Below are positions 6,941 through 63,040 of a stretch of 64,000 nt of DNA, in pieces. The stretch spans positions 3,604,398 through 3,668,397 of the forward strand of contig NW_003314266.1 in NCBI RefSeq assembly GCF_000143415.4, given 5' to 3'. The translations under genes were made by a program, and so were the position numbers. Position 1 is the first letter of the stretch; each line of letters starts with the position of its first letter. This DNA comes from Selaginella moellendorffii. Its lineage: Eukaryota > Plantae > Lycopodiophyta. Under the pieces are notes generated by a model, which saw only the letters and a program-made list of their open reading frames with translations, was not told the origin of the DNA and did not search any database.

Positions 6941-7178
6941 AATCTCGGCAAATCTCTAAGAACTTGACAAGTATTATAATATTAATACTTAAAATATTAT
7001 TAAAACATGTAAACAATAGCGAACTATTGTGTACAAATGTCATGAACAAATGGTACTCATCTTTAATGATTTTTATTATTTAAAACTAATAATTAAAAAA
7101 TTTGAGAAAAAACACATGGCAAACTAAAACTCTATAAAATAGATATATAGTTTAATTGCTTATTTCTTATTTGTAATA

Positions 7179-27257: not shown

Positions 27258-29222
27258 ATGAGTCTAGAGGATAGTAACAGCAGGCACAGGCTCCAGGATG
27301 ACTACATAATTGGTCCAGTTTTGGGGTATGGAGGATTCTCGGTGGTGAGGAAGGGAGTTCACAAGGAAGATGGTACTGAAGTTGCCATAAAGACTTTGAG
27401 GAAGCAAGGCTTTGGCTATGGTGACAAGAAGAATGGTGGAAGGCCTTTGGCAGGGGCTACTAAGCGAGGCAGGGGTTCTAGAGGCAGGAAGAGCACGGCA
27501 GGGCCAACGCAGGACAGCTTAATTTCCGAGGCACTGGTCGCGAATGAGATCATAGTAATGCAAAGGATTGTGGAGAATGTGTCACCGCATCCAAACATCG
27601 TCCACTTACACGACGTTTACGAGGACGAAGCAGGCGTGCATTTGGTGCTGGAGCTTTGCTCCGGAGGGGAGCTGTTTGACAGGATAGTTGCTCAAGAGAA
27701 GTACTCGGAAGCTCAGGCGGCTAAAGTTGTCAAGGAGCTCGCGACTGGATTGTGTAGCCTTCATGATGCTGGGATCGTCCACAGGGATCTCAAGCCGGAG
27801 AATTGCCTCTTCCTGACCCCGGAAGAGGATAACCATCTTAAGATCATGGACTTTGGTTTGAGCCAGATTGATGGAGCAACGAGTCCGATCGTTGGAATGT
27901 TTGGATCAGTTGACTACGTTGCTCCAGAGACTTTATCGCATCGAGACGTGCTTCCTGCGAGTGATATGTGGTCCTTGGGGGTGATTCTCTACATCCTTCT
28001 GTGCGGGTAACCATGCAAACTTTCATTTTTCTTCAACCTTGTGTAATCGTGTTATCTTCTTTCTTTGGGTTAACCAGGTATCCACCATTTCATGGAACAA
28101 GTAACAAAGAGAAGCTGGACCTCATTCTTGCGGTAGGCATTGACTGCCTTTGCTAATAAATCTAAGCTTTCTTCCTTCCAGGGTGATGTGAATTTTGAAG
28201 AGTACACTTGGAAAACTATTTCCAGCCATGCCAAGCAGCTCATACGTGACTTACTGGCTGTCGATCCGCATCGAAGGCCGTCAGCCAAGGCGGTAATGCT
28301 TTATATGCTGCCTTTTTCTCTTGTTTGAGCCTCTTCCTGCTGAGAATCGAAAAGTGTTTGTGCAGCTGGTTTCAGATCCATGGGTGCGAGGAGACATTGC
28401 AAAGCAAGACCGTCTACCCGAAGAAGTCATACGCCAGCTACACTTCTTCAATGCTCGTCGAAAGTTTCGAGCAGCAGCTTTTGCTAGCATCGTCAGCAAC
28501 AAGTTCTTACACCTTACCAAGAACTTGAAGAGCCTGGTCGGTTCACGGTCTCTCAGCGGTGACGAGCTCCAGGATCTCGTCAGCCACTTCAAAAAGCTGT
28601 AAGATAGACTCATCCTGGAGCGCTGGTAATTACTCTACTGATATGACTGCTTGACAGCTCCACAAACGGCGTGGACGTCGCACTGGGTGAATTCGAAGCG
28701 GTTCTGGAGGCAATGAAGATGAGGTCCTTGCTTCCTCTGGCACCTCGCATTTTCGACCTGTTCGATCACAACAGGGACGGCGCGGTCGACATGCGTGAGA
28801 TCGTCTGCGGCTTCACGTCACTCAAGCAGTCTCACGGGGACGAAGCTCTCAAACTCTGCTTTCAAGTAAGATTTTCTTTCGTTCTTCCTTTTTTTCTTTC
28901 CGAGCGACACTAGAAATTCTCTCAAACTCGGTCGTAGATGTATGACTCGGACGGCTCTGGCTACATTTCCAAAGACGAACTGGCATCGATGTTGAGAGTA
29001 AGCACAACTTAGAGCTCTTTAAACCTTACTCGCTTCTATCTTTTCCAGGCTCTTCCGGAAGAATGCTTGCCGGGGGACATCACCGAGCCAGGGAAGCTGG
29101 ACGAGATGTTTGATCGAATGGATGCTAACAGCGATGGTCGGGTAAGCTTTGACGAGTTCAAGGACGCAATCCAGATGAACAGCTTCCTAAGGGAGGCCGT
29201 GCTCTTTCCTTTGCGTGCGTAG
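27258..29222 (+). CDS. CCaMK: Calcium- and calmodulin-dependent protein kinase (CCaMK/DMI3), about 7 exons
   Basis: ALVANEIIVMQRIVENVSPHPNIV, HRDLKPENCLF, MDFGLS, CaM-binding FNARRKFRAAA, and three EF hands (DHNRDGAVDMRE, DSDGSGYISKDE, DANSDGRVSFDE). Confidence 0.93.
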
Positions 29223-32346: not shown

Positions 32347-33309
32347 GAGATGAATTCCTCCTCCTTGCACCCTCACGGATTGATGAACAGGAGCTAGAGT
32401 TTTGCTGGATCGATCCATCGAAGAGAGAGGGAGCGGAGCTTAGCGATGGTGGTGCTGTTTGCAGCAAATGGAGATGGATCCAGGAGGAGCTGCTCGTCCT
32501 CGCCCTGTGGATCATGATAGCGTGATCGATGATCGCAGTACGCTGCCTTGGGAAATGGAGATGGTGATTATAAGTCCATGGATAGAGGATGATAGATTTC
32601 CATAGCCTGGATAGTACCTATAGCGGTAACTTGTAGCAAGGAAGAACTGGAAGGGAGGAGATCATTCGCTCATAGCTAGACAGACATAAGTTCTTCTCTT
32701 TCTTTCTTTTTTTCTCTCTCTCTTTTTTCCTCCTCCTCAGTAGCAGCAGTGAGTGTAGCAGCAGTGAGAGCGAGCAGCGCTTTGTCCAGGCCCAAATTCA
32801 TCGCTGCGACCGTGGGGCATTCTTGTGTCATGCTGCGGTCACTTGGTACTCACTCACAGCATTGACATCGATCGATCGCGCGGATCACTTCACTTACTGC
32901 TACTTCGTTGTTGGTTCTTCTAAGTTCTTCTCCTCCTCTCTTCTTTCTCGCTATAAGAACTTTTCCTCCTTCATCCAGTCCATGGCCGGCGCTCGTCCTT
33001 CTCTTTCTCTCTTCGGCATCGTCCCACCAGTGGAAGCTTCCAAGATCTTCCACGAGGAGCTTAGTTTGAACAGTGGTATATAGTAGCATAGAGAATTTTA
33101 TAAACTTTGGCGCAGCCAGGAGGAGAAGAGAGCGAGAGAAAGAATCGCTGGATGATCCGGCCGGAATGATCAGGAATTCTGGGTGGTAAGCAAAACAAAG
33201 GAGAGATCTTTGGGTGGTTCTTTCTCTTGGGTTTCATCGACCATCACCATCATCGAGAGAGAGAGTGAGAGATAGACATATCGATCGAGGAGTGAGGGAA
33301 AGAAAGAGG

Positions 33310-33526
33310 ATGAATCCGTCCAGGTTTCCAGCGGCATTTCCATTCCAGCAGATGCTCGAGCTCCACCACCAGCACCAGCAACAGCAGCAGCAGCAGCAGC
33401 AAGAAATTCCTCCACACCAGCACTCCGAGGACGAAGATAACAGCAGCAGTGGGAACAAGGAGCTAGAACATCCACACCACCACCACCTCCACCACCAGAT
33501 TCACCACCACCACCAGCAACAGCAGC

Positions 33527-33557
<31 letters not shown>

Positions 33558-34503
33558 TCAGCACCAGCAAAGCCCGCAAGCCCAGAAATCTCCCGGCGGA
33601 GGTGGCGGAGGTGGCGGCGGTGGCGGTGCTGGATCCGGCGGTGAGGTGGTCGCCCCCGTCCGCAAGCCGCGAGGCCGCCCGCCGGGATCCAAGAACAAGC
33701 CCAAGCCGCCCATCATCATCACGCGCGACACGGGCTCCGGGATGCGCCCCCACGTCCTGGAGATCGCGCCCAACACCGACATCGTGGACGCCATCGCCAC
33801 CTTCGCCCGCAAGCGCCAGCGCGCGCTGTGCGTCCTCTCGGCGCGTGGCACCGTCTCAAACCTAACGCTCCTCCGCCACTCCCCCGCCTCCTCCACCGCC
33901 TCCGCGCCGCCCTCCTCGCCGCCATCCTCCTCCGCCGCATCCACCGGCGCCACTCCCTCCTCCTCCCGCGCCGCCGCCGCCGCCACCTCCACGGTCTCCT
34001 TCCAAGGCCGCTTCGAGCTCATCTCCCTCTCCGGGGCATTCCTCCAGCAGCAAATGCCCAGCGCGGGCATCTTGGGGGCATATTCCGGGCTAGCGGTGTC
34101 CGTGGCCGGGGGACCGCAAGGACAGGTCCTCGGTGGAAATGTGGCCGGTCCTCTGGTGTCGGCCTCTCCAGTGATGGTCATCGCCGCCTCCTTCGTCGGC
34201 CCAGCGTTCGATCGCCTGCCACTGGACGATCAAGATGGCGAGATTCCGGAAGAACAGCCAGCCGCGGGGGCGGCGGCAAATCCCAGTCCCAATTCCACTT
34301 CCGGCCAGTTGGGTCTGCCGCAGCACGGGAATTCGTCGCCCCCATCGATCCCGATCCACCAGCTGATGAACGATCCATTTGGGCTGGCGGCGGCGGCGGC
34401 GGCGGCGCACCACCACCACCACCACCACCAGATCCCGCCGCCGGAATTGCTGGCTTCTTGGGCGGCCGCCGCTGCCGCTGGAGCTACCAGGCCGCCAATG
34501 TGA
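33310..34503 (+). CDS. AT-hook motif nuclear-localized (AHL) protein, intronless clade A type
   Basis: RKPRGRPPGSKNKPK AT-hook plus PPC domain (HVLEIAP, GRFELISLSG, GGNVAGPLVSASPVMVIAASF); polyQ/H/G tracts. Confidence 0.95.
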
Positions 34504-38684: not shown

Positions 38685-40868
38685 TTAGCCAGTGTTGCAC
38701 TGCCATTCTCGGCTATCGATTTCTTTGAGCAGTGCTTTTTCCAGCTCGAGCTCATGGATGATCTCGTCATATATCTTGTCTTCTTTATCACCTGAGTGAG
38801 TATCACAAAGAGCTCAGCGGATAGAAATCATACCGACGATTACTTCCACAGATTTTATATACTTTTGGTTGATGAGAACTTGAGAGATCAATCACCTGCT
38901 GGAGTTTGGATCGTCACGATAAACCCCTTTTGCCTTAGCTCGATCTCGGCAGCCTCTCGGTTGTAAGTCTCAACCTCGAAACTCAGAGGCTCGGGTGGCG
39001 CATCTCCCTGTATAACCAAGAACGTTTAGCGAGCTTCCCGAAACGAAACGAAAAGTGTAAGAACCTGTTCGTATCGATCATAAGGAAGCACTGTTGGATC
39101 CAAACGCCATCCAGAAACTCCTTGTTTGTACACATAGCACCTAGAAAGAGCATGACAAGCTACTTCTTTTTCTATTCCTCTATTGATTTTACCTTGTTAT
39201 GCCAGCATCCGAGCACAACTGGGCCACCCACATTGCTCGCTTCGACGTCCTGCCTAAGCACAAGAATGACAAATGATGAGGAAAAAGAGTTGTAAAGCTA
39301 AAGTGGAGACTCACTGTATAGGATCACCACGTCGTTCTCCTCAATCTTTGGAAAATGATGATTGTTCTCCCAATCGCTCGCACTCATAGCCAAGCCTTTA
39401 GGCCATTCTTCCACTGCAAGTTCCAGCTGTTTAGAAGATTACAGTGAGTACGAATTTGGTACCTGGAATGTGTAAAGAGCCAGGAATGTGGCCGTAGAGG
39501 GACCTCTCGTCATATCTGCGAACGTCTATCAACAGAGGCCGGATGCCTGGCTGCTGCTCTTTTGCGTTAAATCCCGCCTCCTGCAGTACGAATGCAACAG
39601 CATCCCTGGATCACCTACACAGATGAGGTCTTGCATGACTCACCAAGCGGCAAGAAAGCATCCAAACCTTCCCAGAAAATTGATGTAGGACCTTCCGGCA
39701 TCGGACATGTACGCTTGGATTCCTCCAGAAAGAACACAGCATCTATAAATGCCGAAGAGTAAGTCGTGACACAAAGAATAACGTTTGTCTCTCACCCGTT
39801 AAAGCCAAGCTCAGCAGCAACAGTAGCAGCCCGTTGTGCTCGCTGTCCTCTCGTCGAAACAAAAACCAGAATAGCGGTTCTCGTCGGTTGCTTGGCTGCT
39901 GGAAACCGGCTATCCCATACGCTTTCTACGAGTTGTAAGCAGGCTCTCACTTCACTTTCTGCATTACTAGAACGTCAATTTCAGGTGTAAAAGCCCGAAA
40001 AACAACACCGACAGAAGCCAACAGTGAAACAAGGGACAAGAAACATCACGAGCAATAAAGAAAAGGAACACAAACAAAGAAAGTAAGAACAAAACAACCA
40101 AACGAAAGAAACACAAAGAAAGAAAGAACAAGCAAGCCAAACAAACAAGAACAAAAGGTGGAAAGAAGTACCTGGAATGTTGATCACGTACTCGAGCGAG
40201 AAGGCGCTGGCACGAACAGCATCCGGATGCCTCACGTCGATGAGCAAGAAGGGCACGCTATCCAGCTCCGCGAGCTTCCTCACCGCCTTGGGACTTAGCA
40301 TCGCGTAGAGCGGAGAATCCACAGGCCTGAAAGGAAGGCTATTGATCCTCGCCTCGCTCACCCCTTGTCCATCTCTAAGCATCTGTCGCCGCCGAGCCAA
40401 GACCCTGCGAAGCTGCCTCACGCTCCACGCAACCACGGCGATCTGGAGCAAGAACGTGATGGAGCCGCCCACGTAGTGGATCAAAAGCCGTCCCCGTTCC
40501 TCGCCATTCTCGCCATTCTCCCCATTCTCCCCATTCTGGGAAGGCGATGGAGCTAGAGCTGCTGGAACCCCAGCGATTCCAGATATTTCGGGGATTCTTT
40601 CGATTGGCGCTGGCTCCGCCCCAAGACTGCCGAAATCCAGGCTGAGCGTGCTGTCCATAAGCTCTGAGGGCATCGTCGGTCGATCCCAGCGCTCGCCATA
40701 GCTGCCGCTGCCTCCGCCATCACCGCCGCTGCCTAATCCTACTCCTGCTACCGAGAATGACAGACCTTGCCGTGGATTCGAGGATGCCGATGGCGGCTGC
40801 GACGATGGGAGCGCCGCCGCAAGCTTCTCCAGGTCGGCAACCATGTCCTCCATTGGAGACGAAGCCAT
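38685..40868 (-). CDS. Membrane-anchored tandem rhodanese-domain protein (multi-exon; ends approximate)
   Basis: TM segment, LLIDVRHP..YVINIP, ILVFVSTRGQRAQRAA..LGF, CVLSGGIQAY, and a second repeat ending CYVYKQGVSGW. Confidence 0.75.
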
Positions 40869-41564
40869 AGCTGGGAGGAGCCCTAATAAAGTAATAAAAG
40901 AAGAGAAAAATGCCAAATCCAAAATGTTTGGATTATAGACCAAATAGAATATGCTTCCAATTTAAAAGCTCTTATACCACCTCCAAGGAGTGTAAACCTT
41001 TCCCTGGACATAGCAAACCATCCAAACGGTATTGAGCTCGAAATGCTAGCCCTGGGAATCTCTCGGGCATAAACTTCGTAGGGTGTTCCCAGATTCTTGG
41101 ATCGCGTCCCATGGCCAAAGTAAACAACGCAGTGCCTTTGGGAATGTGATAGCCGCGGATCTTGCAAGATTCGTCAGAGCTGCGAGGGATGAGGAGTGGA
41201 CCTGGAGGGCAAATTCTCAGAGTTTCCGTACCTTCGGGGCATTGGTGACGAGAGCTAGTATGATAAGTGTAGTTCGCGGTGGCTTGTAGTTGTGATCACA
41301 ACCCCGGGTTTTAGAGAAATCCCAGAAGAACTCAACCTTGCCGAAGATCCACTTTTCTGCCAAACGCTTGTGCTCATGCTCACGGACGAAGACATCACCC
41401 AGATTCCAAGGTAAGGTTTCAAGCTTTCGAGGCCTGGGCTCACGAGTCAGAGCAATCAATAGCCTACCTTCCAGGCCTGTGAGTTAGAGGTCTTAGGTTC
41501 TTGACCAACTTTAGAGCTCTCCGTCCTTTAGAAATGCCGGGGTTGGGGACATCGCATTGGATCC

Positions 41565-41760
41565 TTGTTATGCCAGTATCCGAGCACAACTGGGCCACCC
41601 TCATTGCATGCCTTCAAACAAGAATGAAATGTAAATCTCAAAGAAGAAACTTAAAGAGTTATACAAGCTAAAGTGGAGACTTACTGAATGGAATCACCTA
41701 ATTGCTCGCACTCATAACCAAGACTTCCAAAGTTAGAGAAGTAGAAATTTGGTACCTATG
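41565..41760 (-). pseudogene. Partial duplicate of rhodanese gene exons (39195-39465)
   Basis: ttatgccagtatccgagcacaactgggccaccc and aagctaaagtggagact match 39196-39315. Confidence 0.75.
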
Positions 41761-41846
41761 GAGAAGCCTTAGAAATCATTACTGAGTGAAAAGCGTGATC
41801 GATGCTCGTCTTAAGTCCTCGATGCTGGTATGTTGACCAACGTTGA

Positions 41847-43558
41847 CTAAGTCTGGGGAGCTTTCCCCTGAATGGTCAGAACCGAGAAATCGCCAACGCA
41901 GTAGTGATGGATCGTCTTCCTTGGGTCTAGAGCCACGCCATTATAGCAAAGCTGCCACTTCTTCTCGTTTGATACAAGCTCATGTGCTACCTTTCTCTTG
42001 ATCGCTCTCACGCTCGCGTTGCTTGGAAACATCGCTGTGTACGAGCTCCCTGTCGTGGGCGAGACCACCGTGATCCATAGCTGTGTCTCCGGCGATGATC
42101 TAGATTGATTCCGAGCTCAGGAAACACTTAGAGAGTATTCTAGAGTTTTTCTTACCTTTTGGATCTCTTGTTCTTGCGAGAAAGCTGATGCTGATTTCGC
42201 TGATGCTCGCATTCTTCCTCGCTGGTGGAATCTTGATCGCTCGAGGACGTGGGTATGTCGAAACAGTAGCTACATTTCCTCTTGATCTTCATGTCGAGAA
42301 GACGCATCTCTCTCCTGAAACTTTGGAGCAGATCGAGCTTGTCCAGTACGACGCTCTCAAGCTTTAACTCGAAGAGTTTAGCGCAGTCCACTTTGGCCAA
42401 GAGTTCCCGGAGCTTCTCCCTGTCGAAGTCCTCGATGCTGGTCATTATAAACCTGTTGATCTCCTGGCAGAGAATGTCGTGACCAGTCGATCGATCGGAG
42501 ATGAAGCCGGCGACCTCCAAGAACTCGTCGAGATTCATCTGCCCTGGACACGACTCTTGCAAGTAGACTTCCATGAAGTGGACGGCGAGCCTTGTGTATT
42601 CTGGCTGATGCCTCGCAAAGTTTCTAGCGAGAGATAGAGCCGAGATGGAATCAGGAAAACCAGTTCTTCGACTCTGATCGCACGGAAGGAGATTCCCAAA
42701 GAAGTCGATCTGCAAGGCCTTGATCAAGTTGCGGTCGATCTTCTTCAGTCGTGAACTAGAAGCAGCCAGGAAATCCAAAAGCGCAAGAGCTGGAAAGATG
42801 GCAAGCAAGCCGTCGAGGGTGTCGTCCACATTGCCTCGATCAGGGAGTTTCCTCATGTGTTCTTCATGGAGATCTACTTTTTCTTGGAAATGCTTGAGCA
42901 GAAACTCGGAGAAAAGCCCGGCGTTGCGGCAAATCTGGAGCCTTTGCACACATCCAACCTTGAAGATGAGCTTGTGTAGAGCAGTGACGAAGGACTTCGC
43001 GACCCCCCAGAGAACAAAGGCACCATACGGGAGGACTTTTTTCTCGAAAAAGCAGGACAGGAACAAGGAGAGAAGCTCGCTCGATAGATGAAACATCACC
43101 TTCTCGAAAACCTTGTCGAGCGATTCCTCCAGCATCGAAAGAAATCTCAAAGCATCCGAGAAGAAGAGCGATACCTCGGCGTGGGTGGACAAATCTGTCA
43201 ATGTAGGCAGGGCCTTGTCGAGGAGCTTGGCAATGGCGTCGCCATCTCTAGACTCGCGAATCCATAGCAGGTCACACCATCGATCTAGGAGTGGGATCTC
43301 CAAGAAGCTGGAGGCGGCACGAAGAACTGCAACGTTGGACCCGTCCACCCGATTGTCACGCTCTTGCAAGGCCTTGAGAAGTCTATCAAAGCCATCTGAG
43401 CCTCCCGGGAAGTTTGGAAGATCCACAAGCAGGCGACTGCCTCCTCCAGCATCCAGTGCACATTTGCAGATCTTTCGGAAGAATTCAGCTGCTTCCAAGT
43501 TGAACTTATCATCGACAAATCGTTCGCCTGCCACGAAGATCACTACTTCCGGGGCCAT
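41847..43558 (-). CDS. Divergent BTB-NPH3 (NRL-like) protein with a C-terminal ubiquitin-like domain; 2 exons (intron 42155-42100), about 551 aa
   Basis: BTB: VIFVAGERF..LPNFPGGSDGF..SNVAVLRAASSFLEI; NPH3-like HDILCQEINRFI..LLAKVDCAKL; a phase-2 56-nt GT-AG intron joins in frame to LWITVVSPTTG..SVRAIKRKV..QLCYNGVALDPRKTIHHYCVGDFSVLTI. Confidence 0.8.
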
Positions 43559-44387
43559 CCATATAAGAGCTTGGAAGGGTAAAAGAATGACATTAAAGTA
43601 TAACCATTTTAGAATATTCTCTTCTTAAAGAAGGGTTTATTTATATAATTACAATAAACCAATGACATTTTTCAAGAATATAAATAACAAGTAGATAGAA
43701 GGTTTTGAGCCATTTAAGCATAAAAGATAATTACAAAATTGATACAAATAACTGATATTAAAATAAAATAAATAATTTAAAATATTTCTAGAAAAATATT
43801 TTATTACACTTAAATTAATTTTAGCATGTAATTATTTATTATAATACTATTCAGTTGTCATTTCATTCTACATTGTTTAAAATTTTATTTACAAAAAAAG
43901 GATTTATAGTTTTCTAGATGTGACACTTTGATGTTACATATCACACACTTTTTTAGAACTTTGTACTCAGAGTATTCAAAACATAATTAACTTTATATTT
44001 TTTATAAATTAATAAAATATTTGAAATTATTGTAAAATCTTCAACTTTTTTTCATAGTATTATGACTCTTTATATACTAGGCTTATTTAAGTTTAATTAA
44101 ATCTACTATTTACTAAAGTTTTTATTTTTTAATACACAGATTGAAATTTACACTTTTGCTATATCAGTTGCTCAACTTGGCATTTTTATAATTTGTCAAT
44201 GAAGTTTAATGCTTCTAGCTGATGCCACAGATGCCAATCTTAATAAATTTTACATAACAGTTCCATGATAAATAAATGAGTGTTTTTGTAAGTTATGATC
44301 AATGTTGTCGTTTTCCAGCCCCTTAACATAAAGCTTAAAAAGATTTAAAACGACATCCAACAACTCAAAAAGAGTGTTAGAGGTATG

Positions 44388-45507
44388 TGTAAGCGACTAA
44401 ATTTTCCATTCTACTTTAGTCACTTAACCACACCTCTGACCACTTGGAGGAGTCTCATTCACAACCTCCATAAGTCCAATCCAGGACTTGGGACTTGCTA
44501 GCCCCGAGAATGGCATCCATGCCACTCAACATTTGCACTTGGTCCAAGTGCTCCACGTGTCCGATCCCATGACCGACACTCAAAGGTACCACCGACATAG
44601 CAGCCCGTTACGCTAAGGCCATGCCCAATCACCTTTGCCACACTGGTAGTCCAATACCACTTGCATCACCGTCTTGGCTCTCCAAGACTAGGAAAACCAT
44701 CCGTGAGTGGTCATCTCAGATCCACTCCTTAGCATCCTTAGGATGCCCACCGACAAGGGGAATAGCCTTCCTCAATATCCCTCTGTCAGTCCCCACTAAG
44801 TCCCTTTCTGCCCCTGGCCGTGTTTGCCAACACTGCCACTGGATCGAGACCCACAGGCCCGACCACTAAGTCCCACGGTCCTCTGAGACTTCCTCACCAC
44901 ACGACTGTGTCCTTGGTCACTACCCCAGAGAACTGCTCCTCTTCCTTTCCACAGTCTGGGCCTTTGGGACAACATTTCGGAACACCGTGGCCTTACGCGA
45001 GCCACCTGGGTACTCTCCTCGCCTTCTGCCCTTGGGTGCTCTAGCCATGGGCTTAGAGCGGGTTCCGTTGAGCCACACCAGGTATCCAAGTAGGTAGTGC
45101 CACCCACACTTGGACTGGGAGCATCGGCCAGTCGATCTCCCGGGGGAACTAGAGCCGGCTCTTGAACACTTCACCAAGCTACCCCGCTTGTCGGTCTGTG
45201 TTCACTCTAGTCTTGGACTTCCCAGTGGGCAGCTCATCACCCAACACTGGGTCCGGCCTTCCTGGGCCAAACTGGCCTTTCCTGGCCAAACTGGCTCCAC
45301 TGCAGTCCTCCCCCTACTATACTTTTGGAGCTCACCAAACCCCCCAGGGTCTGGGAGACGAACGCTTTGGGCTTTCACCCTCTCAGGCTCCGGACTCGGA
45401 CTCGGACTCGGACTCGGACTCGGACTCGGACTCGGACTCGGACTCGGACTCGGGCTCGGGCTCGGGCTCGGTCTCGGCCTCGGGCTCGGTCTCGGTCTCG
45501 GTCCCGA

Positions 45508-45542
<35 letters not shown>

Positions 45543-46062
45543 ACTTCGGACTCCATCTCGGACTCCATCTCGGACTCCATCTCGGGTCCATCTCGGGCTC
45601 CACTTCGGACTCCAACTCGGGTCCATCTCGGGTCCACCTCGGACTCCACTTCGGACTCCATCTCGGACTCCATCTCGGGTCCATCTCGGACTCCACTTCG
45701 GACTCCAACTCGGGTCCATCTCGGACTCCTCTTCGGACTCCAACTCGGGTCCATCTCGGACTCCACTTCGGACTCCAACTCGGGTCCATCTCGGACTCCA
45801 CTTCGGACTCCAACTCGAGTCCATCTCGGACACTCCCACGTGTCATGTGTTGGTCCTTTTGGGTCTCTTTTTAGAGCCTCGCCTTTTGCTCCCTTCGTGC
45901 TCGTTCCTTGAGCACTTCGTTGGGAGTTCCACTCCCGCTCTTGACTTTTCAAGTCGGAGCTTTTGGTCCAAACGTGTTACACTCGTTTGGCTCTCGCTTC
46001 GGCCACTACCATGTGGCGCCCTTCCGGCTCCACTTTGGGGCCTAGGGATTTTGTGTCTCACA
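44388..46062 (+). mobile_element. Solo LTR (1675 bp) with internal tandem repeat
   Basis: TG..CA termini flanked by a perfect 5-bp TSD GTATG (44383-44387 and 46063-46067). Orientation assignment is tentative. Confidence 0.88.
45389..45830. repeat. (CTCGGA)n hexamer array grading into 12-bp and 36-bp higher-order units
   Basis: ctcgga > ctcggg > ctcggt runs, then repeated ctccatctcgga / ctccacttcggactccaactcgggtccatctcgga. Confidence 0.95.
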
Positions 46063-47053
46063 GTATGTAGTTCTAGGGATAATATGCACAAAGATATAGT
46101 GCATCAACAATCAACTCATGAAAGAAAATATAGAGCTTCATAATGAGATTTACACTCTCAAGGCAAAGGAGCTTATAATAATAGAAAATGACAATAAAAA
46201 TGAGTATAACAAAGAAAATGATGATAATGAGAAGTTCCACCAACTCAATAAGTTCAAAGTTAAATTCACAGGAATTTAGCATTAACAAAGCTAACCAACA
46301 CAATCGAATAGTAAGAGTCTTAAAACAAAGTTTCATTCAATCATGGGAGATTGAAGCACAACTAAACAACCATGTATTTTGGCGTTTTCTTGATAGTTAG
46401 GATTACAATTTTGACACTCAATGTTATAATTTTAATAATCATGATTCAGGAAGAAATGACAATTGCTACCATATAAGAATAGTTTTTATATAAATTATAT
46501 ATGGCGAGTTTTTATATAGATTTTTAAAAAATTTAATTAGGAGACAAAGCTAAATGGTACAAAATCTTTTGGAATTATTTGAATGTAATAATGGCAAACA
46601 GTACAAGTTACAAAAATATTTAAATTTTCTTAAATAAATTTAAAATCTTAAATAATAATTGTGGTTAATATCATATTTTTTTAGAAAAATATTTATTTTT
46701 TATAAATAATTTTTAAATAATAAAATTTAATGGGGCATATAATTTTACATTGCACCAAGTGATGGGATGTTATAGTAATATAAACAATATAAACTATATT
46801 TTTATTTTTATTTATAATTTGCTGTAGATTTTGTTATTATAAGTAAAATTAATATACATACACCAAAATTTTAAAATATTTATAATTTAAATCTCAAATC
46901 TCAAACCTTCCAACAATTTTTTACTTATGTATTTACTTTAACATAATAGAGCCTTTTTATACTATATTTTATATTATTGTTAATCATAATTAAATTAAAA
47001 TATGTTTATATACCATAAGATACTGACATGTTTACTTTTATTTATTATTATAC

Positions 47054-50000
47054 TGTGAGGGCCAAGTGTACGGCTACAATGCCGTATACTAATATTAGCG
47101 TAGTGGATTTTGGTAGACGTCAGATTGGTTTCAATCCGGACCACTCGCTTCTGTATATAAACTAGGGTTTTTGGGCTAATTGATATGCACATTTCTATAT
47201 TCCCTTTCCATATTCCATGCACTCATATTGGTAGAGATGAGGGGCACTTTTGATTGTCCTTAGGGAGTGCTTGGATTTGGGATTTCGGTTTAAATTTAGC
47301 TTTTGCATCGTTTAGATCTAGCTTTTTCCATTTCCTTTCTTTTGTTCTTTCCTTTTAGGATTTTGGTTTAGATTTAGCTTTTTGCATTGTCTAGATCTAC
47401 CATTTCTTTCCAACTTTTTTGTCATTTCTCTTCTTTTGCTCTTTCTTTTTCGTTCATCTTCATGACTGATCCGCAATCTCCTCCTTTGACTCTAGAGCAA
47501 CAGTTGGTTCAATTGCTTGATGCTATGTGCTTGCAATTGAACAACCAAACTCAGTTGATGGCGGCGTTCATGACACATGGTACAACTCCTCCTGCTCTTG
47601 GTGCCAATCCTCGCGTTTGGCCGGAGTTCTTTCGCGGGAATCCTAGGGATGATATATACCATTGGTTCGATCACTTTACGGTGATTGCCACATATCATTC
47701 TTGGGATGATGCTCGACGGTTGCGTGAGTTTCCCACGTGTCTCCAAGGGACGGCATTGTAGTGGTACAATGGTTTGAGCGCAGCCACTTGTGGGGATTGG
47801 AGTGTTCTCCCGGACGTCTTCAAATGTGCCTTCGGACATGCCGATGATTGTGATGATGCTTTCCAACAATTGCATCATCTTCGCTAAGGGCCATCTGAGT
47901 CGGTGATGCAATTTGGCGTTCGTTTCCGAAGTCTTTTGCTTCGTGCGGAGCCAAATATGTCGGAGCGGATCAAGCTAGGAATGTTGTGGCCAGCACTTCG
48001 TCAAGATCTTGTCAGACTTGTGCATGCACTTGCTCTTGTCACCCTTGACGATGCTCTTCACTTGGCACAACGTTATAAGACGTCGCCTCTTCCACTTCTC
48101 GCTGCATGTCCTTCCACTCCACTTCTTATGGGTGATGGTCCTGTTCCAATGGAGGTTGATGCTGTTGCTGCTCGAGTCCAAGGACAAGCGCGAGGACGTG
48201 GTGGTGGCCGTGATGTTCGCTACTGGGCGTGTGATGAAGTTAGTCATACTTATTGGCGTTGCCGTCGTTTTCCGGATTGGTGACCTCCATTTCCTGGGTG
48301 GAGACCTTGGCGTCAGCAACGTCCTCTGGGTGCTGCTGCAATGGAAGGTTTGAACACTGAGATGCATTTGGGAAACGAGGAATCGCGCGAGTAACGGAGG
48401 GACCTTGCGTGAATAAATCAGTGACCCCTCCATCTTTCTTTCGGGAGTATCATCAAGGGGTTCACTCGGCACCAGTTCATCCAGTGTTTACTTTCCAAGC
48501 TCGTTTTATTATTCTCTTATTATTCTCTCCGTGTTGGTTGATACAGGTTCGAGTTTATCTTCTATTGCTCGACCTGTTGCCACACGTTGTCGTCTACACT
48601 TGCGTCGTGCGGCAGAACCAGTTTTCATTCTTTATGGCAACGGCCATACACATGCATGTGCACGGGATGAGGTGGACCTGGTTGTACGTGTGGGCGATCT
48701 CGAGCTTGAGTTGCAGTCGTTGCGGGTGGTGCCGAGTCAAGCTTTTGACTTCATTCTTGGTATGGATTGGTTGCAGCGCAATCATGCCAAGTGTGACTTT
48801 GAGGCTTCTCCCATTTGTCTCATACTTCCTTATATTTCATCCATTCCTCTCACTTCCATACCCCTTCATCCCTATAATTCTACCTCTGCTTCCATTACTT
48901 TTGTTCCCCCACTCTTTCCTTCTGTGTTTCCATTTTGTTCTACTTTTCCCTTTTCCAATCCCTCCAACGCTCTTTGTGTTGCAGTAGTTGACCGGCTCAT
49001 GAAGGAGTATTCTGATCTGTTTGAATTTGACCTATCGTTTGGGGCCAAGATTGCCACATGTCATCCGATTCCAACCGGGGATGCTCGTCCAATCAAGGTT
49101 CATGTTCGTCGTCAGTCACCTAAGGAGATCAAGATTTTACGAGCAAATGTCAAAGAAATGCTGGAGAAGGGTGTTATTCGGAAGTCGCGGAGTCCTTGGG
49201 CATGTGAACCTCATCTTGTGACCAAACCTGATGGGAGTATTCGTTTCTGCATCGACTATCGTCCGTTAAACGAAGTGACGATCCCAGATGTGTATCCTCT
49301 TCCTCACACTGCTGATCTCTTGGATCGTCTGGGGCGAAGTCGTTGGTTCACCAAGCTAGATCTTGCTTCTGGGTATTGGCAAGTACCGATGGCCGAAAAA
49401 GATATTCCTAAGACTGCTTTTCGTACACCATTTGGTTTGTACGAGTTCTTAGTGATGCCGTTTGGTTTGAACAATGCTCCAGCAACTTTCCAGCGGATGA
49501 TGGACGAGGTTCTTTGCGATATACCAGAGGTGACTGCTGACTTCATTGATGATGTCTTGATCCACTCGGAGGGGACGTGGGAGGAGCACGTTCGTGATGT
49601 TTGTAAAGTGTTGGATCGGTTACGTGATGTTGGTTTAAAGCTGAAGCGGTCAAAGTGCGTGTTTGGGTCCAAGGACACAACTTATCTTAGGTACTGTATT
49701 TCTTGTGAGGGTTTGCAAGTTGATCCGGACAAACTTGTGGCTGTTCTAAAGTTCCCTACTCCGAAGTGTGTGAATGATGTGCAGCGCTTTTTGGGTAAGG
49801 TGCAGTATCTCGGTCGTTTTGTGGATCATCTTTCCGATCACACTACACCATTGCAAGCGTTGCTGAAGTCATCAACGTCATCTTTCATCTAGTGTCCGGA
49901 TTGTGAGTGGGCGTTTGTGGATCTCAAAGAGCTATTGACGACTCCTCCGGTTTTGGCATATCCTGACTACACTCGACCTTTTATTTTGCGCGTGGATGCT

Positions 50001-52057
50001 TTTGACATTGGTCTTGGAGGTGTGTTGATGCAAGAGAGCTCGAGTGTGCCTGGTCAGCACCATCCCATTGCATACATAAGTTGTACATTACAACCAGCAG
50101 AGATGAACTACTCCACGATGGAGAAGGAGTGTTTAGCAGCAGTCTGGGGTTTCGAGAAACTTCATGCATATCTACATGGTTCTCAGACGTTACTTGAAGG
50201 TGACCATGCTGCTATTACTTCATTATTGAAGCGGAAGAACCTGGTTGGTCATACGGCTCGATGGGCTTTGAAGCTTCAGATATATGATTTCGATGATGTT
50301 CATCGCCCAGGGAGTTCTATGGCTGATGCTGATGCCCTTTCTCGAGCTCCTCTTCCTTCTCCACTCACTTCTCATGTTTCTGACGAACCTGTTGTTCCAG
50401 CGTCTATGGATTTTCTAGATGAGGATTCTATGCCGTCAGCGGTTGCTGTCCTTGATGTTCAGTGTCCACAGGGCGCAGAGCAAGATCTACCTTCTCTTGA
50501 TGAGGTTCGCGAGGCTCAAAAGATTGAGCCGTGGATTCGAAGGCTTCAAGATGGGTTTGAGAATCCTGCATCACTTGCTGATGACTTACCTTTCCGGCAT
50601 TTACATTCTCAATATCGCCTTGAAGATGGCCTTCTTTATTTTGTGGGGACGGATCCTGATGATCATTTACGGTTGGTGGTGCCTTCAGTGTTTATTCCGC
50701 GGTTTCTTCATGCCTACCATGATTCTCCTGTTCTAGGTGGGCATATGGGACACCGTCGTGTCACTGAGAAGCTGCGCAGGTCTTTCTATTGGCCGAAGAT
50801 GCGATATGATATTATCCAGTATGTGCATAGCTGTGTTTGGTGCCAAGCTCGTAATACTCCCCCTTGTGCTGCGGAAGGACGGTTGGAGTCAATTGCAGTT
50901 TCCCGTCCATTTGAGTTTGTGGCATTTGATCTTATGGGACCTTTTCCACGATCGACTACTGTCAATGAGTATATTATTATTGCTTCTGACTACTTGACTC
51001 ATTGGGTGGAAGTTGGTGCTCTTGCTAGCGCCTCTGCAACTACTGTTGGATACTTCCTCCTCAATCGAGTGGTGTTCCAGCATTCTTGTCCAAAGCGGAT
51101 TCTTTCGGATAATGGTCCTGCATTTATGGCTGAGGTATTTCATGTTTTGACATCTCGGTTGGGGATACACCACACTTTTACGAGTGTTTATCATCCACAA
51201 TCAGATGGTCTGGTGGAACAGCTCGTTTGAACATTCAAAGGGATGATTGCGAAGTATATGAACTTTTAGCATTCAGATTGAGATGGTTATTTGCCGTCTC
51301 TTTGGTATGCCTATGTCACAAGGGTGCAGAGTTCTGTTGGTGCTTCATCATATAAACTTCTATATGGTCATGATCCAATATTACCAACAGAGTTGGGTTT
51401 ACCTTCGCAATTGCCACGAGCTCCTGATGCTAGGTCATGGGATTAGTATTTGACAAGCATTCTTCCACTTGTCCAAGCAGAGTCTACCAAACACTTAGGC
51501 TGCGTACAAGTGGGACAACAACGACGCTACAACTCCCATCATCGTCCACCTGCGGAGTACAAAGTGGATGATTTGGTGTTAGTCCGTTTTCCCCATCTTA
51601 CGGTACGTGGTTTATCTAAAGGGCTCCTTGCGCAGTGGAAAGGACCGTATCGGGTGTTGCGGCAAGTTGGACCGCAAGTTTATGAAGTTCGGCATGACGT
51701 TCAGCAGGCTGATCCTCCGGAGATTGTGTATGTGCAGCGGTTAAAACGCTTCATACAAAGGGATCAGGAGCAGTTAATACCGTCTACAGATCCGCCGATG
51801 CCTCCTCCTGATGTTCCTCCAGATCCCGGCCCATCTACAAGAGAACCCTGACGGCCTTCCATTATTCCGAGAGGAGGGGATGATATGAGGGCCAAGTGTA
51901 CGGCTACGATGCCGTATACTAATATTAGCGTAGTGGATTTTGGTAGCCGTCGGATTGGTTTCAATCCGGACCACTCGCTCTTGTATATAAGCTAGGGTTT
52001 TTGGGCTAATTGATATGCACATTTCTGTATTCCCTTTCCATATTCCATGCACTCACA
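47054..52057 (+). mobile_element. Near full-length Ty3/Gypsy LTR retrotransposon (non-chromovirus-like), 5004 bp, several in-frame stops
   Basis: 174-bp LTRs at 47054-47227 and 51884-52057 (about 9 differences); TSD ATAC; PBS tggtagagatgagggg (tRNA-Ala-like); PPT gagaggagggga; gag from 47462; pol order PR (LVDTGSS), RT (FIDD), RNase H, INT (HxxH..CxxC, ILSDNG, WKGPYRV); no chromodomain. Confidence 0.95.
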
Positions 52058-60874: not shown

Positions 60875-62620
60875 TTAGCTAAAACCTTGATAGGCCTTTT
60901 GGGCGAGCTGTACATCCGTTTGCTTGTTGAGCCCATTTGCCGGATGAAGAACTGGAAACCTCTCGTCGCGCTGCCGCTGGATCACGACTTCCGGCATTCC
61001 AATCCCGACGAAAGCTGGCCTGTTCTCCTGCTGCTGATGGAAGTGCTGCGGCTCGGAGCGATCGCTAAACTGCCTGTGTACCTGAGGATGGTGAGCAGTG
61101 GCAGTGGCAACCGCTGGAATCTCCACGGCCTGCTGCAGCATTGGAGTCGACACCGGTCGAGGGATCGCGTGCTGCTCCAGGAGTTTCCTGTGAAGAGCGT
61201 CACTGCTGGGAGCGTAGAATTGATGCCCAAGAGTAGCAGCGGCTACTGCTGGAGGACGAGCCAAAGCCTCCAGTCCCATTGGAACAAGCCGCTGAGGCAA
61301 CCCGTTCGTCTTGTGCACGTCTAGCAGCTCGCCTCTCGGGATGTGCTGAACGAGTAGCTTCTCTTGAGGCCTCTCCGCCACCTTGAGCTTCTCGAAGTCC
61401 GAGAGAGTGGCGTCCAAAGCTCTCCTGTCCATGGCGTCGCTCTCCCCAGAGTCTCGTCGATCCATAGCCAGCGAGCTCATGTCGGTTAGCTGGCTGCTGC
61501 TTTGCGACGACACGGAGTCCGAGTGCTCGTCCTCCACGGAGTACTGCCTGATCACCATTCCCTTGGGCAGTATACCCCGTGAAACCTCCACCAGAGGCAC
61601 GTAAGTCGACGATGGCACCACGGCTCTCGACGCTGCCATCACCTGAGGCACTACCGATCGAGCAGCCACTACTTGCGGAACCAGAACTGGCGATGCTGCC
61701 TGAGCTCCGGGAACAAGTGAGGGAGTTCCAGGCGCGTAAATTCGAGGGGGCGTCGCGGCTGCTGTCAAGTTCTTGGTTGGAACTGTGACGAGGTTCACTG
61801 GAACGGATGGTGGCAAAACCTGGGGTGATACTACTGGTGGCACAACGCTTGGAATCAGAGGTGACGCTGCCGCTGGAGCTAGAGCTTGGGCTGGAGATGC
61901 TGCTGCTGGAGCTAGAGCTTGAAGTGGAGTTGGGGCTGGAGATGCTGCTGCCGGGGCTGGAGGAACTAGAGCTTGAACTGGAGCTGGGACTGGAGCTGGT
62001 ACGATTTGAGGTTGTAGAACTTGAGGTAGAACCGCAGGAGGAACTGCTACAACTTGCGGTGCTGCCATAGGCATGGCTGGACTTTGCTGTGCTACTAGAG
62101 GTGGCGCCGCCTTGTCGACCAAAACCACAGGTTTTTTGTGCTGCTCCTCCAAAACCACGTTGGCCTTCCTATAAACTCCATTCACAGCCTCGACGAACTT
62201 GTGCTCCGGATCGCCAGCATTCTCGTGACCCGGTGGCTGCTTCGCGGACACCGGAAAGAGAAAGAGCCTCAGCCTCGACGATGAATCCTTGGATTCCATC
62301 CTGTCATACTCCTCCATCATGTTCTCCAGGTCCTCCTCCGAGATCACCGAGACCAGCGCGTCCAAATCTTCGTTTGGCAGCTGGTACTTGAGGATAAAAC
62401 TCTCGTATGGACAGATCTTTCGGAGCTTCGTCATGAGATCGATCACTGAGACGCCCCTGTGCACCGAGAGAATTCTCGTCTCACCACCCACGTAGCGGAG
62501 CTGGGAGTCGTGCGGGCGAGGCATGATTCGACCACCATAGCTGCACAGGAATTTGGCGCGTCCCGTGAGCGAATCCTCCGACTTGACGGATCCCTGGTCC
62601 TCTGCAAAGGCCGCACACAT
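60875..62620 (-). CDS. PB1 (octicosapeptide/Phox/Bem1p) domain protein with Pro/Ala-rich tail
   Basis: KFLCSYGGRIMPRPHDSQLRYVGGETRI..LKYQLPNEDLDALVSVISEEDLENMMEEY..RLRLFLF; likely 5'UTR intron at about 62703-62633. Confidence 0.9.
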   Translation of the reverse strand: MCAAFAEDQGSVKSEDSLTGRAKFLCSYGGRIMPRPHDSQLRYVGGETRILSVHRGVSVIDLMTKLRKICPYESFILKYQLPNEDLDALVSVISEEDLENMMEEYDRMESKDSSSRLRLFLFPVSAKQPPGHENAGDPEHKFVEAVNGVYRKANVVLEEQHKKPVVLVDKAAPPLVAQQSPAMPMAAPQVVAVPPAVLPQVLQPQIVPAPVPAPVQALVPPAPAAASPAPTPLQALAPAAASPAQALAPAAASPLIPSVVPPVVSPQVLPPSVPVNLVTVPTKNLTAAATPPRIYAPGTPSLVPGAQAASPVLVPQVVAARSVVPQVMAASRAVVPSSTYVPLVEVSRGILPKGMVIRQYSVEDEHSDSVSSQSSSQLTDMSSLAMDRRDSGESDAMDRRALDATLSDFEKLKVAERPQEKLLVQHIPRGELLDVHKTNGLPQRLVPMGLEALARPPAVAAATLGHQFYAPSSDALHRKLLEQHAIPRPVSTPMLQQAVEIPAVATATAHHPQVHRQFSDRSEPQHFHQQQENRPAFVGIGMPEVVIQRQRDERFPVLHPANGLNKQTDVQLAQKAYQGFS

Positions 62621-63040
62621 GATTGAAAGCTCCTGGAGGGACAAAGGAAAAAGCTCGCTTTCAACACTGTACACTTTAAACAGAAAAAAAATTCCCAACT
62701 TACTCAAAGCCTTTCGAATCTTTGCCTTTCCGTTGCCTCCATCGCTAGATCGCGCCGCCAAGCTCACAAAAGCCCCATTCCCGCGCAGGCAAGGATCAAT
62801 CTAGGTCAAAAATGCACCTGAGAGAATCTAAGCGCCGATGCGCCGGAGCAGTGCCGCCGATCCAAATCACATAGCCAAAACGCTCCCCGTGAGCGCCAAG
62901 AAATCAGGGCTCTCCAAAACCGCCATAGCTTGACCTCCAAAACGTGCCAATGACATGCCCACGTTTACCCTACTTTTCTGACGCGTTTACCTCTCTATGT
63001 CTAGCCACCTATAGCCGGTTAGCCCGCCACTATTCAAACT

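What the first reader, a model, noticed from the sequence alone, without database searches (positions are those of the whole stretch)
41847..43558. BTB-NPH3 protein fused by splicing to a C-terminal ubiquitin-like domain
Seen: the 468-aa ORF ends at AG|GTAAG (42156/42155), and a 56-nt intron ending ..ctag (42100) joins it in frame to a clear beta-grasp Ubl (LWITVVSPTTG..SVRAIKRKV..QLCYNGVAL..KTIHHY.V..SVLTI) with no terminal GG. Known: NPH3/RPT2-like proteins are BTB substrate adaptors for CUL3 ligases and normally end in a coiled coil/14-3-3 motif, while integral Ubl domains typically dock on the proteasome or Cdc48. Inference: a fast-evolving, lineage-specific adaptor that could couple CUL3 substrate recognition directly to proteasome delivery, or act as a decoy. 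I know of no described NRL with this architecture. The NPH3 part is intronless and divergent, and there is a basic NLS-like linker (RKNKRSKR).
Basis: partly seen in the sequence, partly recalled or inferred. Interest (0 to 1): 0.8.

Follow-up and report, generated by a model that had tools for sequence, protein, structure and literature searches.

The report
Spikemoss BTB/NPH3-like gene ending in ubiquitin-like exon
A spikemoss gene for a very divergent relative of the plant NPH3/RPT2 light-signalling adaptors seems to carry, on a small final exon, a built-in ubiquitin-like domain; a second copy of the gene has the same layout, but no RNA evidence yet shows the two exons joined.

Summary
There is a 468-codon ORF (43558-42155, minus strand) ending in AAAAG|GTAAG. 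A 56-nt GT..AG interval follows, then an in-frame terminal exon (42099-41847) encoding a ubiquitin-like (Ubl) beta-grasp domain without a C-terminal GG.

The strongest support is comparative. Among 1.84 billion representative proteins the only relative is Selaginella moellendorffii SELMODRAFT_425024/421407, at 31-34% identity. Its locus has the same layout: an intronless ORF, a polybasic end, a 50-nt GT..AG intron and an in-frame Ubl exon that scores 35 bits against Pfam ubiquitin. The public models of that gene read the Ubl exon out of frame, so the architecture does not appear in databases.

The N-terminus is an NRL-type BTB domain (hhalign E 1e-7). The NPH3 domain is not detected by Pfam. 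It is supported only by a marginal profile-profile match (P about 0.01) and by protein-language-model similarity.

RNA evidence is lacking: two RNA-seq runs show no reads on the gene, and nothing spans the junction. The ubiquitin L8/I44/V70 patch is not conserved, which weakens the proteasome-docking idea.

Verdict: this is probably a real, lineage-specific, fast-evolving NRL-like plus Ubl architecture, whose function is unknown. Another first-stage note (s1-420915) reports the same thing on another piece of this genome, probably the other haplotype.

The parts
42156..43558 (-). Exon 1: intronless coding body (467 full codons plus 2 nt). ATG at 43558-43556; the exon ends AG at 42157-42156.
   Evidence: aligned end to end with the S. 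moellendorffii paralog ORF L001:6001-7443 at 34% identity
43259..43546 (-). NRL-type BTB/POZ domain (residues about 5-100), with the motif L..FPGG..F....K...(N)V..LR.A..(Y/F)LE(I/M)
   Evidence: hhalign of A1 against 32 NRL proteins: prob 94%, E 1e-7. NRL-derived HMM: 15.9 bits here and 17.8 bits in the paralog, against a maximum of 3.5 for 400 shuffles. The paralog passes Pfam BTB at 21.1-21.6 bits against a cut-off of 20.5. The window protein itself has no Pfam hit.
42374..43231 (-). All-helical middle region (residues about 110-395), a candidate highly divergent NPH3 domain
   Evidence: AlphaFold2 predicts helices, pLDDT 50-79. ESM Atlas features for residues 115-430 alone: every top hit is a PF03000 cluster, score 0.90, 185 shared features. 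No PF03000 hit in Pfam.
42344..42589 (-). Best-supported NPH3-core match (residues about 324-405): LAVHFMEVYLQE...EFLEVAGFIS...HDILCQEINRFI...REKLRELLAKVDCAKL, aligned to the NRL consensus LMESYLAEIA..KFI.LAELIP...DGMYRAIDIYLK...ERKKVCSLMDCQKLS
   Evidence: hhalign 73 columns, score 27.9, P 0.009; 0 of 200 column shuffles reach it (mean 16.3, sd 3.0, max 27.2). An HMM-to-sequence search finds the same place but scores only 1.2 bits.
42266..42361 (-). Long C-terminal helix (residues 400-431), in the position of the NRL coiled coil
   Evidence: AlphaFold2 helix H400-431, low confidence. Position compared with the NRL domain order given in PMC8531357.
42245..42280 (-). Motif RKCSYCxDIPTS (residues 427-438), conserved between paralogs (11 of 12 residues identical); function unknown
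   Evidence: invariant columns R427-S438 except position 433 in alignment A1
42155..42178 (-). Polybasic linker RKNKRSKR (residues 461-468); the last codon spans the splice site
   Evidence: the paralog has KHKKKRKK at the same place
42100..42155 (-). Predicted 56-nt GT..AG intron (GTAAGA...ATCTAG), phase 2. If it is retained, the frame stops at TAA 42154-42152.
   Evidence: the paralog has a 50-nt GT..AG intron at the equivalent place (L001:7444-7493), with both splice dinucleotides kept in both alleles. No RNA evidence.
41847..42099 (-). Terminal exon 2: 83 codons plus TAG (41849-41847). It has no in-frame ATG ahead of the domain.
   Evidence: tblastn against the paralog exon L001:7497-7715, E 1e-7, 37% identity
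41865..42083 (-). Ubiquitin-like beta-grasp domain core (WITVV...VLTIQG). No GG; hydrophobic patch not conserved.
   Evidence: Pfam PF00240 24.1 bits here and 35.4 bits in the paralog; AlphaFold2 pLDDT 85.7; Foldseek against PDB; alignment to ubiquitin

Best explanation
This is a real two-exon gene of Selaginella moellendorffii that is absent from the protein collections searched here. It is one of two dispersed paralogous loci of a lineage-specific, fast-evolving offshoot of the NPH3/RPT2-like (NRL) family. The predicted 551-aa product has these parts in order: an NRL-type BTB domain, a helical region that is most likely an NPH3 domain diverged beyond HMM recognition, a coiled-coil-like helix, a conserved RKCSYCxDIPTS motif, an acidic/Ser-rich stretch and a polybasic linker. 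After a 56-nt intron comes an integral, non-conjugatable ubiquitin-like domain. This domain sits where canonical NRLs have their tail with the RxS 14-3-3 site. Shown here: the sequence geometry, the Ubl fold, the NRL-type BTB, and conservation of the whole layout between paralogs that are only 31-34% identical. Inferred: (1) the intron is spliced; (2) the BTB dimerises and binds CUL3 as in NPH3; (3) the Ubl is a protein-interaction module that changes what the adaptor complex binds or how it is turned over. Because the ubiquitin I44 patch is not conserved, I think a specialised partner or an in-cis regulatory role is more likely than classical docking on proteasome ubiquitin receptors. Retaining the intron would give a Ubl-less isoform ending ...SKR*, so splicing could switch between the two forms.
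For: Geometry and in-frame join. Only relative: P0001 = SELMODRAFT_425024, E 1e-25. Its locus L001 has an ORF ending KHKKKRKK|GTACGT, a 50-nt intron and an in-frame exon NRMWITVVAPQTSSS...TLTIRN...*. That exon scores PF00240 35.4 bits and Rad60-SLD 27 bits, both above their cut-offs. The body and the Ubl exon are each 34% identical between paralogs. The window's Ubl exon has no in-frame ATG and follows an AG acceptor, so it needs an upstream exon. Both introns have lengths that are not multiples of 3 and carry early stops, yet splicing restores the frame in both. The alleles L001/L002 keep the ORF, GT, AG and Ubl frame intact; coding divergence is 2.0-2.4% against 5-9% in the flanks. BTB. NPH3-like region. 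Ubl fold.
Against: No RNA support. Two raw RNA-seq runs, each with about 12% of the run read, give zero reads over 41706-44500 while the neighbouring gene has 12-23x depth, and no joint was found. Only short low-depth contigs from runs of unknown type touch the ORF and the Ubl exon. No transcript-derived protein of either paralog is in the collections. Intron phase differs between the paralogs (2 versus 0). Pfam NPH3 does not hit, and the NRL HMM scores the NPH3 region at noise level. The AlphaFold2 model of the body is poor (pLDDT 54). Between alleles 21 codons differ nonsynonymously and 12 synonymously, giving a rough dN/dS of about 0.5, which is only moderate constraint. CUL3 binding is entirely inferred.
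Confidence: 0.6

Rival explanations
1. The ORF is translated without splicing and ends ...RKNKRSKR* at the TAA inside the GTAA donor. The Ubl exon is then a separate relic or an untranslated downstream sequence.
For: No junction-spanning read or contig. The stop lies immediately after the donor. The public models of the paralog do not use this splice.
Against: The Ubl frame stays open and recognisable in two paralogs that are only about 34% identical, and it passes Pfam in one of them. In both it lies 50-56 nt after the ORF, behind canonical GT..AG sites that restore the frame. The window copy has no ATG of its own. The public model removes a segment conserved at the protein level (RKCSYCxDIPTS) and reads the Ubl exon in a frame with no homology.
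Confidence: 0.12
2. The locus is a silent, recently inactivated or dispensable lineage-specific gene, intact by sequence but not used, so the architecture has no present function.
For: Zero reads in two RNA-seq runs. No protein in the collections searched comes from this locus. The family is tiny and fast-evolving, with a rough allelic dN/dS of about 0.5 at the paralog. A retroelement and microsatellite-rich DNA lie nearby.
Against: A 468-codon ORF plus an 83-codon exon without a single stop cannot survive by chance over the divergence seen between paralogs (31-34% identity). Both sampled raw runs come from a single study. Short exact contigs from two other runs, X1 and X2, lie on the ORF and the Ubl exon at depth 2-13; X2 behaves like RNA at the neighbouring gene.
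Confidence: 0.15
3. It is a BTB protein with a C-terminal Ubl, but the helical middle is not an NPH3 domain (for example a BACK-like or novel helical domain). In that case it is not an NRL at all.
For: No PF03000 hit at E<=10 in any of the three proteins. The NRL HMM scores the region within the shuffle range. hhalign probability for the region alone is only 4%. The fold search of the poor model gave nothing.
Against: The BTB is specifically NRL-like, and after the paralog the best hits of the profile word search are BTB+NPH3 proteins, though not significant at E 0.24 and 0.83. The weak NPH3 match is collinear, falls on the most conserved NPH3 core (YL.E...DC.KL) and beats all 200 shuffles. 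Language-model neighbours are NPH3 clusters even with the BTB removed.
Confidence: 0.2

Closest known systems
NPH3/RPT2-like (NRL) proteins of land plants (NPH3, RPT2, NCH1/SR1IP1, NPY, At3g22104-like)
   Same: An N-terminal BTB with the NRL signature (..PGG..F....KF....(N)V..LRCAAEYLEM), followed by a helical domain with a recognisable YL.E...F..LA..IP...D..YRAID.YLK...ER..(C/L)..(M/V)DC.KL core, then a long helix where the coiled coil sits and basic residues near the C-terminus.
   Different: No Pfam NPH3 hit. The main ORF is intronless. There is no C-terminal RxS 14-3-3 site; the NRL alignment A3 ends ..KDRRHSIS, and this protein ends in a Ubl instead. It has an extra conserved CSYC-DIPTS motif. 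It is restricted to Selaginella as far as the databases show.
SELMODRAFT_425024 / SELMODRAFT_421407 (EFJ12837.1, EFJ16990.1), S. moellendorffii hypothetical / 'BTB domain-containing' proteins
   Same: The only detectable homologs (E 1e-25). The locus has the same layout, including the short intron and the Ubl exon.
   Different: 31-34% identity and a different genomic neighbourhood, so this is a dispersed paralog. The public models splice L001:7273-7468 and read the Ubl exon in the wrong frame, so neither shows a Ubl. Intron phase is 0 rather than 2.
Integral Ubl domains of UBL-containing proteins (Ddi1, Rad23/Dsk2, UBL4A, BAG6)
   Same: A beta-grasp fold that is part of a larger protein rather than processed or conjugated. 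The best structural matches include the Ddi1 UBL and UBL4A, and weak sequence matches include BAG6 and UBL4A.
   Different: It is C-terminal rather than N-terminal. The L8/I44/H68/V70 surface used by UIM/UBA/Rpn receptors is replaced by polar residues. It is attached to a BTB adaptor.

Membership tests
NRL (NPH3/RPT2-like) family | N-terminal BTB/POZ domain | tested here: met
   hhalign against 32 NRLs: E 1e-7, prob 94%. NRL HMM: 15.9 and 17.8 bits against a shuffle maximum of 3.5. The paralog passes Pfam PF00651 at 21.1-21.6 bits against 20.5. The window protein alone does not reach Pfam.
NRL (NPH3/RPT2-like) family | Central NPH3 domain (Pfam PF03000) | tested here: inconclusive
   The formal Pfam criterion is not met: no PF03000 hit at E<=10 in the window ORF, P0001, P0122 or the L001 ORF, and HMM-to-sequence scoring is at noise level. 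Support comes only from profile-profile comparison (73 columns, P 0.009, 0 of 200 shuffles) and from ESM Atlas neighbours that are all PF03000 clusters (0.95 for the whole protein, 0.90 for residues 115-430).
NRL (NPH3/RPT2-like) family | C-terminal coiled-coil region | tested here: inconclusive
   AlphaFold2 predicts one long helix at residues 400-431, but at low confidence. No coiled-coil predictor was run.
NRL (NPH3/RPT2-like) family | C-terminal RxS phosphorylation / 14-3-3 site (present in many NRLs but not all) | tested here: not met
   The spliced product ends ...LTIQGKAPQT and the unspliced one ...NKRSKR. The NRL alignment A3 ends ..RRHSIS. The feature is described in PMC8531357 and PMC8531446.
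NRL (NPH3/RPT2-like) family | CUL3 binding / substrate-adaptor activity | not testable with these tools
   Needs interaction assays. Reported for NPH3 by Roberts et al. 2011, as cited in PMC8531357.
Ubiquitin family (Pfam PF00240), integral Ubl type | Significant match to the ubiquitin profile | tested here: met
   The window exon scores 24.1 bits, E 3.1e-5, just under the 25.4 cut-off. The homologous paralog exon scores 35.4 bits, E 9.4e-9. The two-sequence profile hits single ubiquitins in the PDB at E 4.5e-6.
Ubiquitin family (Pfam PF00240), integral Ubl type | Beta-grasp fold | tested here: met
   AlphaFold2 pLDDT 85.7 with b-b-a-b-b-3/10-b topology. Foldseek TM 0.77-0.83, prob 1.00, to ubiquitin, NEDD8, ISG15 and the Ddi1 UBL.
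Conjugatable ubiquitin-like modifiers | C-terminal di-glycine exposed or exposable by processing | tested here: not met
   The tails after the last strand are QGKAPQT* here and RNTTKRPR* in the paralog; no GG.
Proteasome-shuttle type Ubl (Rad23/Dsk2-like) | Conserved L8-I44-V70 hydrophobic patch | tested here: not met
   HMM alignment to ubiquitin gives L8->T/Q, I44->C/T, H68->T/T and V70->Q/R for window/paralog.

The most novel reading that the evidence does not exclude
A CUL3 substrate adaptor of the NRL lineage has swapped its phototropin/14-3-3-regulated tail for a built-in ubiquitin-like domain, so that one polypeptide couples substrate recognition to a downstream ubiquitin-system partner (proteasome, Cdc48 adaptor or deubiquitinase). 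Retention of the 56-nt intron would switch between the Ubl-bearing and Ubl-less isoforms.
Probability: 0.12. Interest if true: 0.7.

Novelty: new variant of a known kind. Interest (0 to 1): 0.45.

Why it matters
If the splice is real, this is a domain architecture (NRL-type BTB adaptor plus integral C-terminal Ubl) that I could not find in the literature or in the protein collections. In those collections it is hidden, because the only annotated relative is modelled with the Ubl exon out of frame. It would show that the regulatory C-terminus of NRL proteins can be replaced by another module in a lycophyte. It would also give a small natural system for asking what an integral Ubl does on a cullin adaptor. 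Its reach is limited. The family is known from one species, expression is unproven, and the Ubl lacks the surface used for classical proteasome docking. On the practical side, it flags one locus absent from the protein collections and two probably mis-modelled S. moellendorffii genes.

Tried and rejected
(1) Pfam on the 468-aa ORF gave nothing at E<=10.
(2) The word-index homolog search with the ORF gave nothing.
(3) phmmer against PDB sequences gave nothing for the ORF.
(4) The AlphaFold2 model of the 468-aa body from a two-sequence alignment had pLDDT 54. The ESM-Atlas fold search on it gave only TM<0.5 matches to unrelated bacterial helical proteins, which I discarded as meaningless.
(5) An NRL-derived HMM against the NPH3 region scored 1.2 bits, inside the shuffle range.
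(6) RNA evidence: the single read-laying run showed no reads in the two raw RNA runs and no joints.
(7) Exact look-ups of window proteins, meant to reach the other haplotype, found nothing on record.
(8) tblastn of the ORF and the Ubl against the window found no further copies there.
(9) The spliced 551-aa protein was never submitted to any search or fold.
(10) The 45-nt RNA-covered stretch at 41563-41607 is not a further exon of this gene. The reads carry a fixed mismatch and run on at both ends into sequence that is not in this region.

Full report
OBSERVATION. On the minus strand an ATG-initiated ORF of 468 codons runs from 43558 to 42155, with its stop at 42154-42152. It ends AAAAG|GTAAGA, and the TAA stop is part of the GTAA donor. 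The next 56 nt (42155-42100) begin GTAAG and end CTAG. Joining 42156 to 42099 gives 1403 + 253 nt, that is 552 codons including the stop. The junction reads ...QHQLSRKNKRSKR|SSPETQLWITVVSPTTG...VLTIQGKAPQT*. The other nearby AG acceptor (ACACAG|C) would be out of frame. The downstream frame has no ATG ahead of the domain. It therefore looks like a 3'-terminal coding exon that needs an upstream exon.

THE UBL EXON. Pfam gives PF00240 (ubiquitin) at E 3.1e-5 and 24.1 bits, just below the curated 25.4. AlphaFold2 on a two-sequence alignment gives mean pLDDT 85.7 and the classical beta-beta-alpha-beta-beta-3/10-beta order. Foldseek against the PDB returns only ubiquitin-fold proteins (Ddi1 UBL, ubiquitin and its variants, NEDD8, ISG15, UBL4A, TINCR) at TM 0.77-0.83 and probability 1.00. 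There is no C-terminal GG. The HMM alignment to ubiquitin, read together with alignment A2, places T/Q at L8, C/T at I44, T/T at H68 and Q/R at V70 (window/paralog). The hydrophobic patch used by most ubiquitin receptors is therefore not kept.

THE 468-AA BODY. Pfam finds nothing, even at E<=10. The word-index search finds nothing, and neither does phmmer against PDB sequences. An exhaustive phmmer over 1.84 billion representatives finds exactly one relative, P0001 (E 1e-25, 31% identity over residues 5-402). P0001 is SELMODRAFT_425024 of Selaginella moellendorffii. Its 90% cluster also holds SELMODRAFT_421407, which lies on another scaffold and looks like the other haplotype's allele. Earlier follow-up notes of this scan name the window's genome as S. 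moellendorffii. I did not verify that independently. If it is right, the window gene is a dispersed paralog that is missing from the protein collections.

BTB. P0001 and the L001 ORF pass Pfam BTB at 21.1-21.6 bits against a cut-off of 20.5. A profile of the two paralogs (A1) aligns to the BTB of 32 SR1IP1/NCH1-type NRL proteins (A3) with probability 94% and E 1e-7. The alignment covers the NRL signature around FPGG...F...K...NV..LR.A..LE. An HMM built from those NRLs scores the N-termini at 15.9 and 17.8 bits, against at most 3.5 bits for 400 shuffled sequences.

NPH3. PF03000 is not detected in any member. The NRL HMM scores the region at noise level, 1.2 bits. Three weaker lines point the other way.
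(a) hhalign of the BTB-less parts gives a collinear 73-column match on the most conserved NPH3 core (YL.E ... F..A..I ... D...I..(Y/F)(L/I) ... (E)(R/K)..L..L(M/V)DC.KL). The score is 27.9 and P is 0.009. None of 200 column-shuffled controls reaches it (mean 16.3, sd 3.0, max 27.2).
(b) After P0001, the best hits of the A1 profile search are two BTB+NPH3 proteins, but at E 0.24 and 0.83.
(c) In the ESM Atlas, 34 of the 40 nearest clusters are NPH3/BTB clusters (0.95, 208 shared features). With the BTB removed (residues 115-430), the nearest clusters are still all PF03000 (0.90, 185 shared).
I read this as a probable (about 0.75) but unproven, extremely divergent NPH3 domain. The AlphaFold2 model of the body is all-helical but poor (pLDDT 54), and the fold search on it was uninformative.

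THE DECISIVE COMPARATIVE RESULT. At the paralogous locus L001, the ORF (6001-7443) ends ...RKCSYCMDIPTSEEEE...KHKKKRKK|GTACGT. A 50-nt interval (7444-7493) ends TGTAG. The next exon (7494-7742, including the stop) reads NRMWITVVAPQTSSS...DFATLTIRNTTKRPR* in frame. That exon is 34-37% identical to the window's Ubl (tblastn E 1e-7). It passes Pfam ubiquitin at 35.4 bits and Rad60-SLD at 27 bits. So two genes whose bodies are only 34% identical both keep a Ubl exon 50-56 nt downstream. In both, the exon sits behind canonical splice sites that restore the frame, and after a polybasic stretch. The two alleles L001 and L002 keep the ORF, GT, AG and Ubl frame. Coding divergence between them is 2.0-2.4%, against 5-9% in the flanks. 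In the body, 12 codons differ synonymously and 21 nonsynonymously, a rough dN/dS of about 0.5.

The public models of both alleles use a different splice (7273-7468). That splice deletes the segment conserved with the window protein (RKCSYCxDIPTS, the acidic tract and the basic tract). It then reads the Ubl exon in a frame that gives a tail with no homology (...RAHIRLCVEPDVDHGRG...). This explains why no BTB/NPH3+Ubl protein is visible in the databases. One discordance remains: intron phase is 2 in the window and 0 in L001, and the junction lies 7 versus 3 residues before the conserved W.

RNA. The raw runs, each with about 12% of the run read, gave zero reads from 41706 to 44500. The neighbouring gene at 40500-40900 had 12-23x depth in the same runs. 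No joints were reported. Contig sets X1 and X2 hold short exact pieces on the Ubl exon and 3' flank (41768-41995, depth 12.9) and on the ORF (42740-42916, depth 8.4; 42407-42664, depth 2.1). None bridges 42100-42155. X2 behaves like RNA at the neighbouring gene, so these pieces hint at low expression, but they prove nothing. Splicing and expression therefore remain unshown.

MECHANISM (inferred). By analogy with NPH3, the BTB should dimerise and bind CUL3, and the helical domain should bind the substrate or partner (PMC8531357). Canonical NRLs end in a coiled coil, basic membrane-binding motifs and an RxS site. Phosphorylation of that site recruits 14-3-3 proteins and releases the protein from the plasma membrane (PMC8531357 and PMC8531446). 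The NRL alignment A3 ends ..RRHSIS. Here the basic stretch is kept (RKNKRSKR / KHKKKRKK), but the RxS tail is replaced by a Ubl. The Ubl cannot be conjugated and lacks the I44 patch. I therefore favour a dedicated protein-interaction or in-cis regulatory role over classical proteasome-receptor docking. Retaining the intron would give a Ubl-less isoform. The intronless body in both paralogs fits an origin by retroposition of an NRL mRNA followed by capture of a 3' exon; this is speculation, and NRL intron content is from my own knowledge.

NOVELTY. Literature searches for NPH3/BTB together with a ubiquitin-like domain found no description of such an architecture. I rate it a new variant of a known kind: an NRL-like BTB adaptor with a new C-terminal module. 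Interest is moderate. The family is tiny, confined to one species as far as the data show, unproven at the RNA level, and of unknown function. Another first-stage note, s1-420915, reports the same title and the same 1712-letter span on another piece of this genome. It is probably the other haplotype, and I have not checked it.

LIMITS. The spliced protein itself was never searched or folded, because no reference exists for it. The window's species assignment rests on earlier notes.

Noticed in passing
L001:6001-7742 and L002:3001-4750 (GCA_000143415.2 GL377636.1 / GL377616.1): The public gene models SELMODRAFT_425024 and SELMODRAFT_421407 probably use a wrong 3' splice (L001:7273-7468). That splice removes a conserved segment and reads a Pfam-significant ubiquitin-like exon out of frame. 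An alternative 50-nt intron (7444-7493) gives an in-frame Ubl.
   Followed up: yes
window 41563-41607: This 45-nt stretch is covered by many minus-strand-type RNA reads in X12, X13 and X2. The reads carry a fixed T>C at 41577 and run on at both ends into sequence not present in 40500-44500. It looks like a fragment of a highly expressed gene that lies elsewhere, not an exon of the gene studied here.
   Followed up: partly
window 42245-42280 and L001:7297-7332: The motif RKCSYCxDIPTS, with a CxxC, lies between the coiled-coil-like helix and the acidic tract. Apart from one position it is identical between paralogs that are otherwise about 34% identical. I could assign no function.
   Followed up: no
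window 39981-40943 (-): The neighbouring multi-exon gene (MASSPMEDMVADLEKL..., with a GENGENGEN repeat) is expressed at 12-23x depth. It shows apparent allelic variants in the RNA reads, including a 3-nt GGC insertion after 40599 in about 60% of reads. The long ORF has no Pfam hit.
   Followed up: partly
window 40972-41127 (-): A short ORF reading ...DPRIWEHPTKFMPERFPG... resembles, by eye only, the C-terminal region of cytochrome P450s. It may be a gene fragment or an exon. Not tested.
   Followed up: no
window 45110-46143: A GC-rich (0.60) low-complexity/microsatellite block gives long spurious ORFs in all frames (GLGLGL, SDSDSD, RTRTRT repeats).
   Followed up: no
window 48531-51230 (+): Ty3/gypsy-type retrotransposon pol region (aspartic protease, RT, RNase H, integrase), split over two ORFs.
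   Followed up: partly
window 60875-62767 (-), 33214-34503 (+), 27258-28010 (+): Other genes in the window: a PB1-domain protein, a PCC/AHL-type (PF03479) protein and a protein kinase exon.
   Followed up: partly
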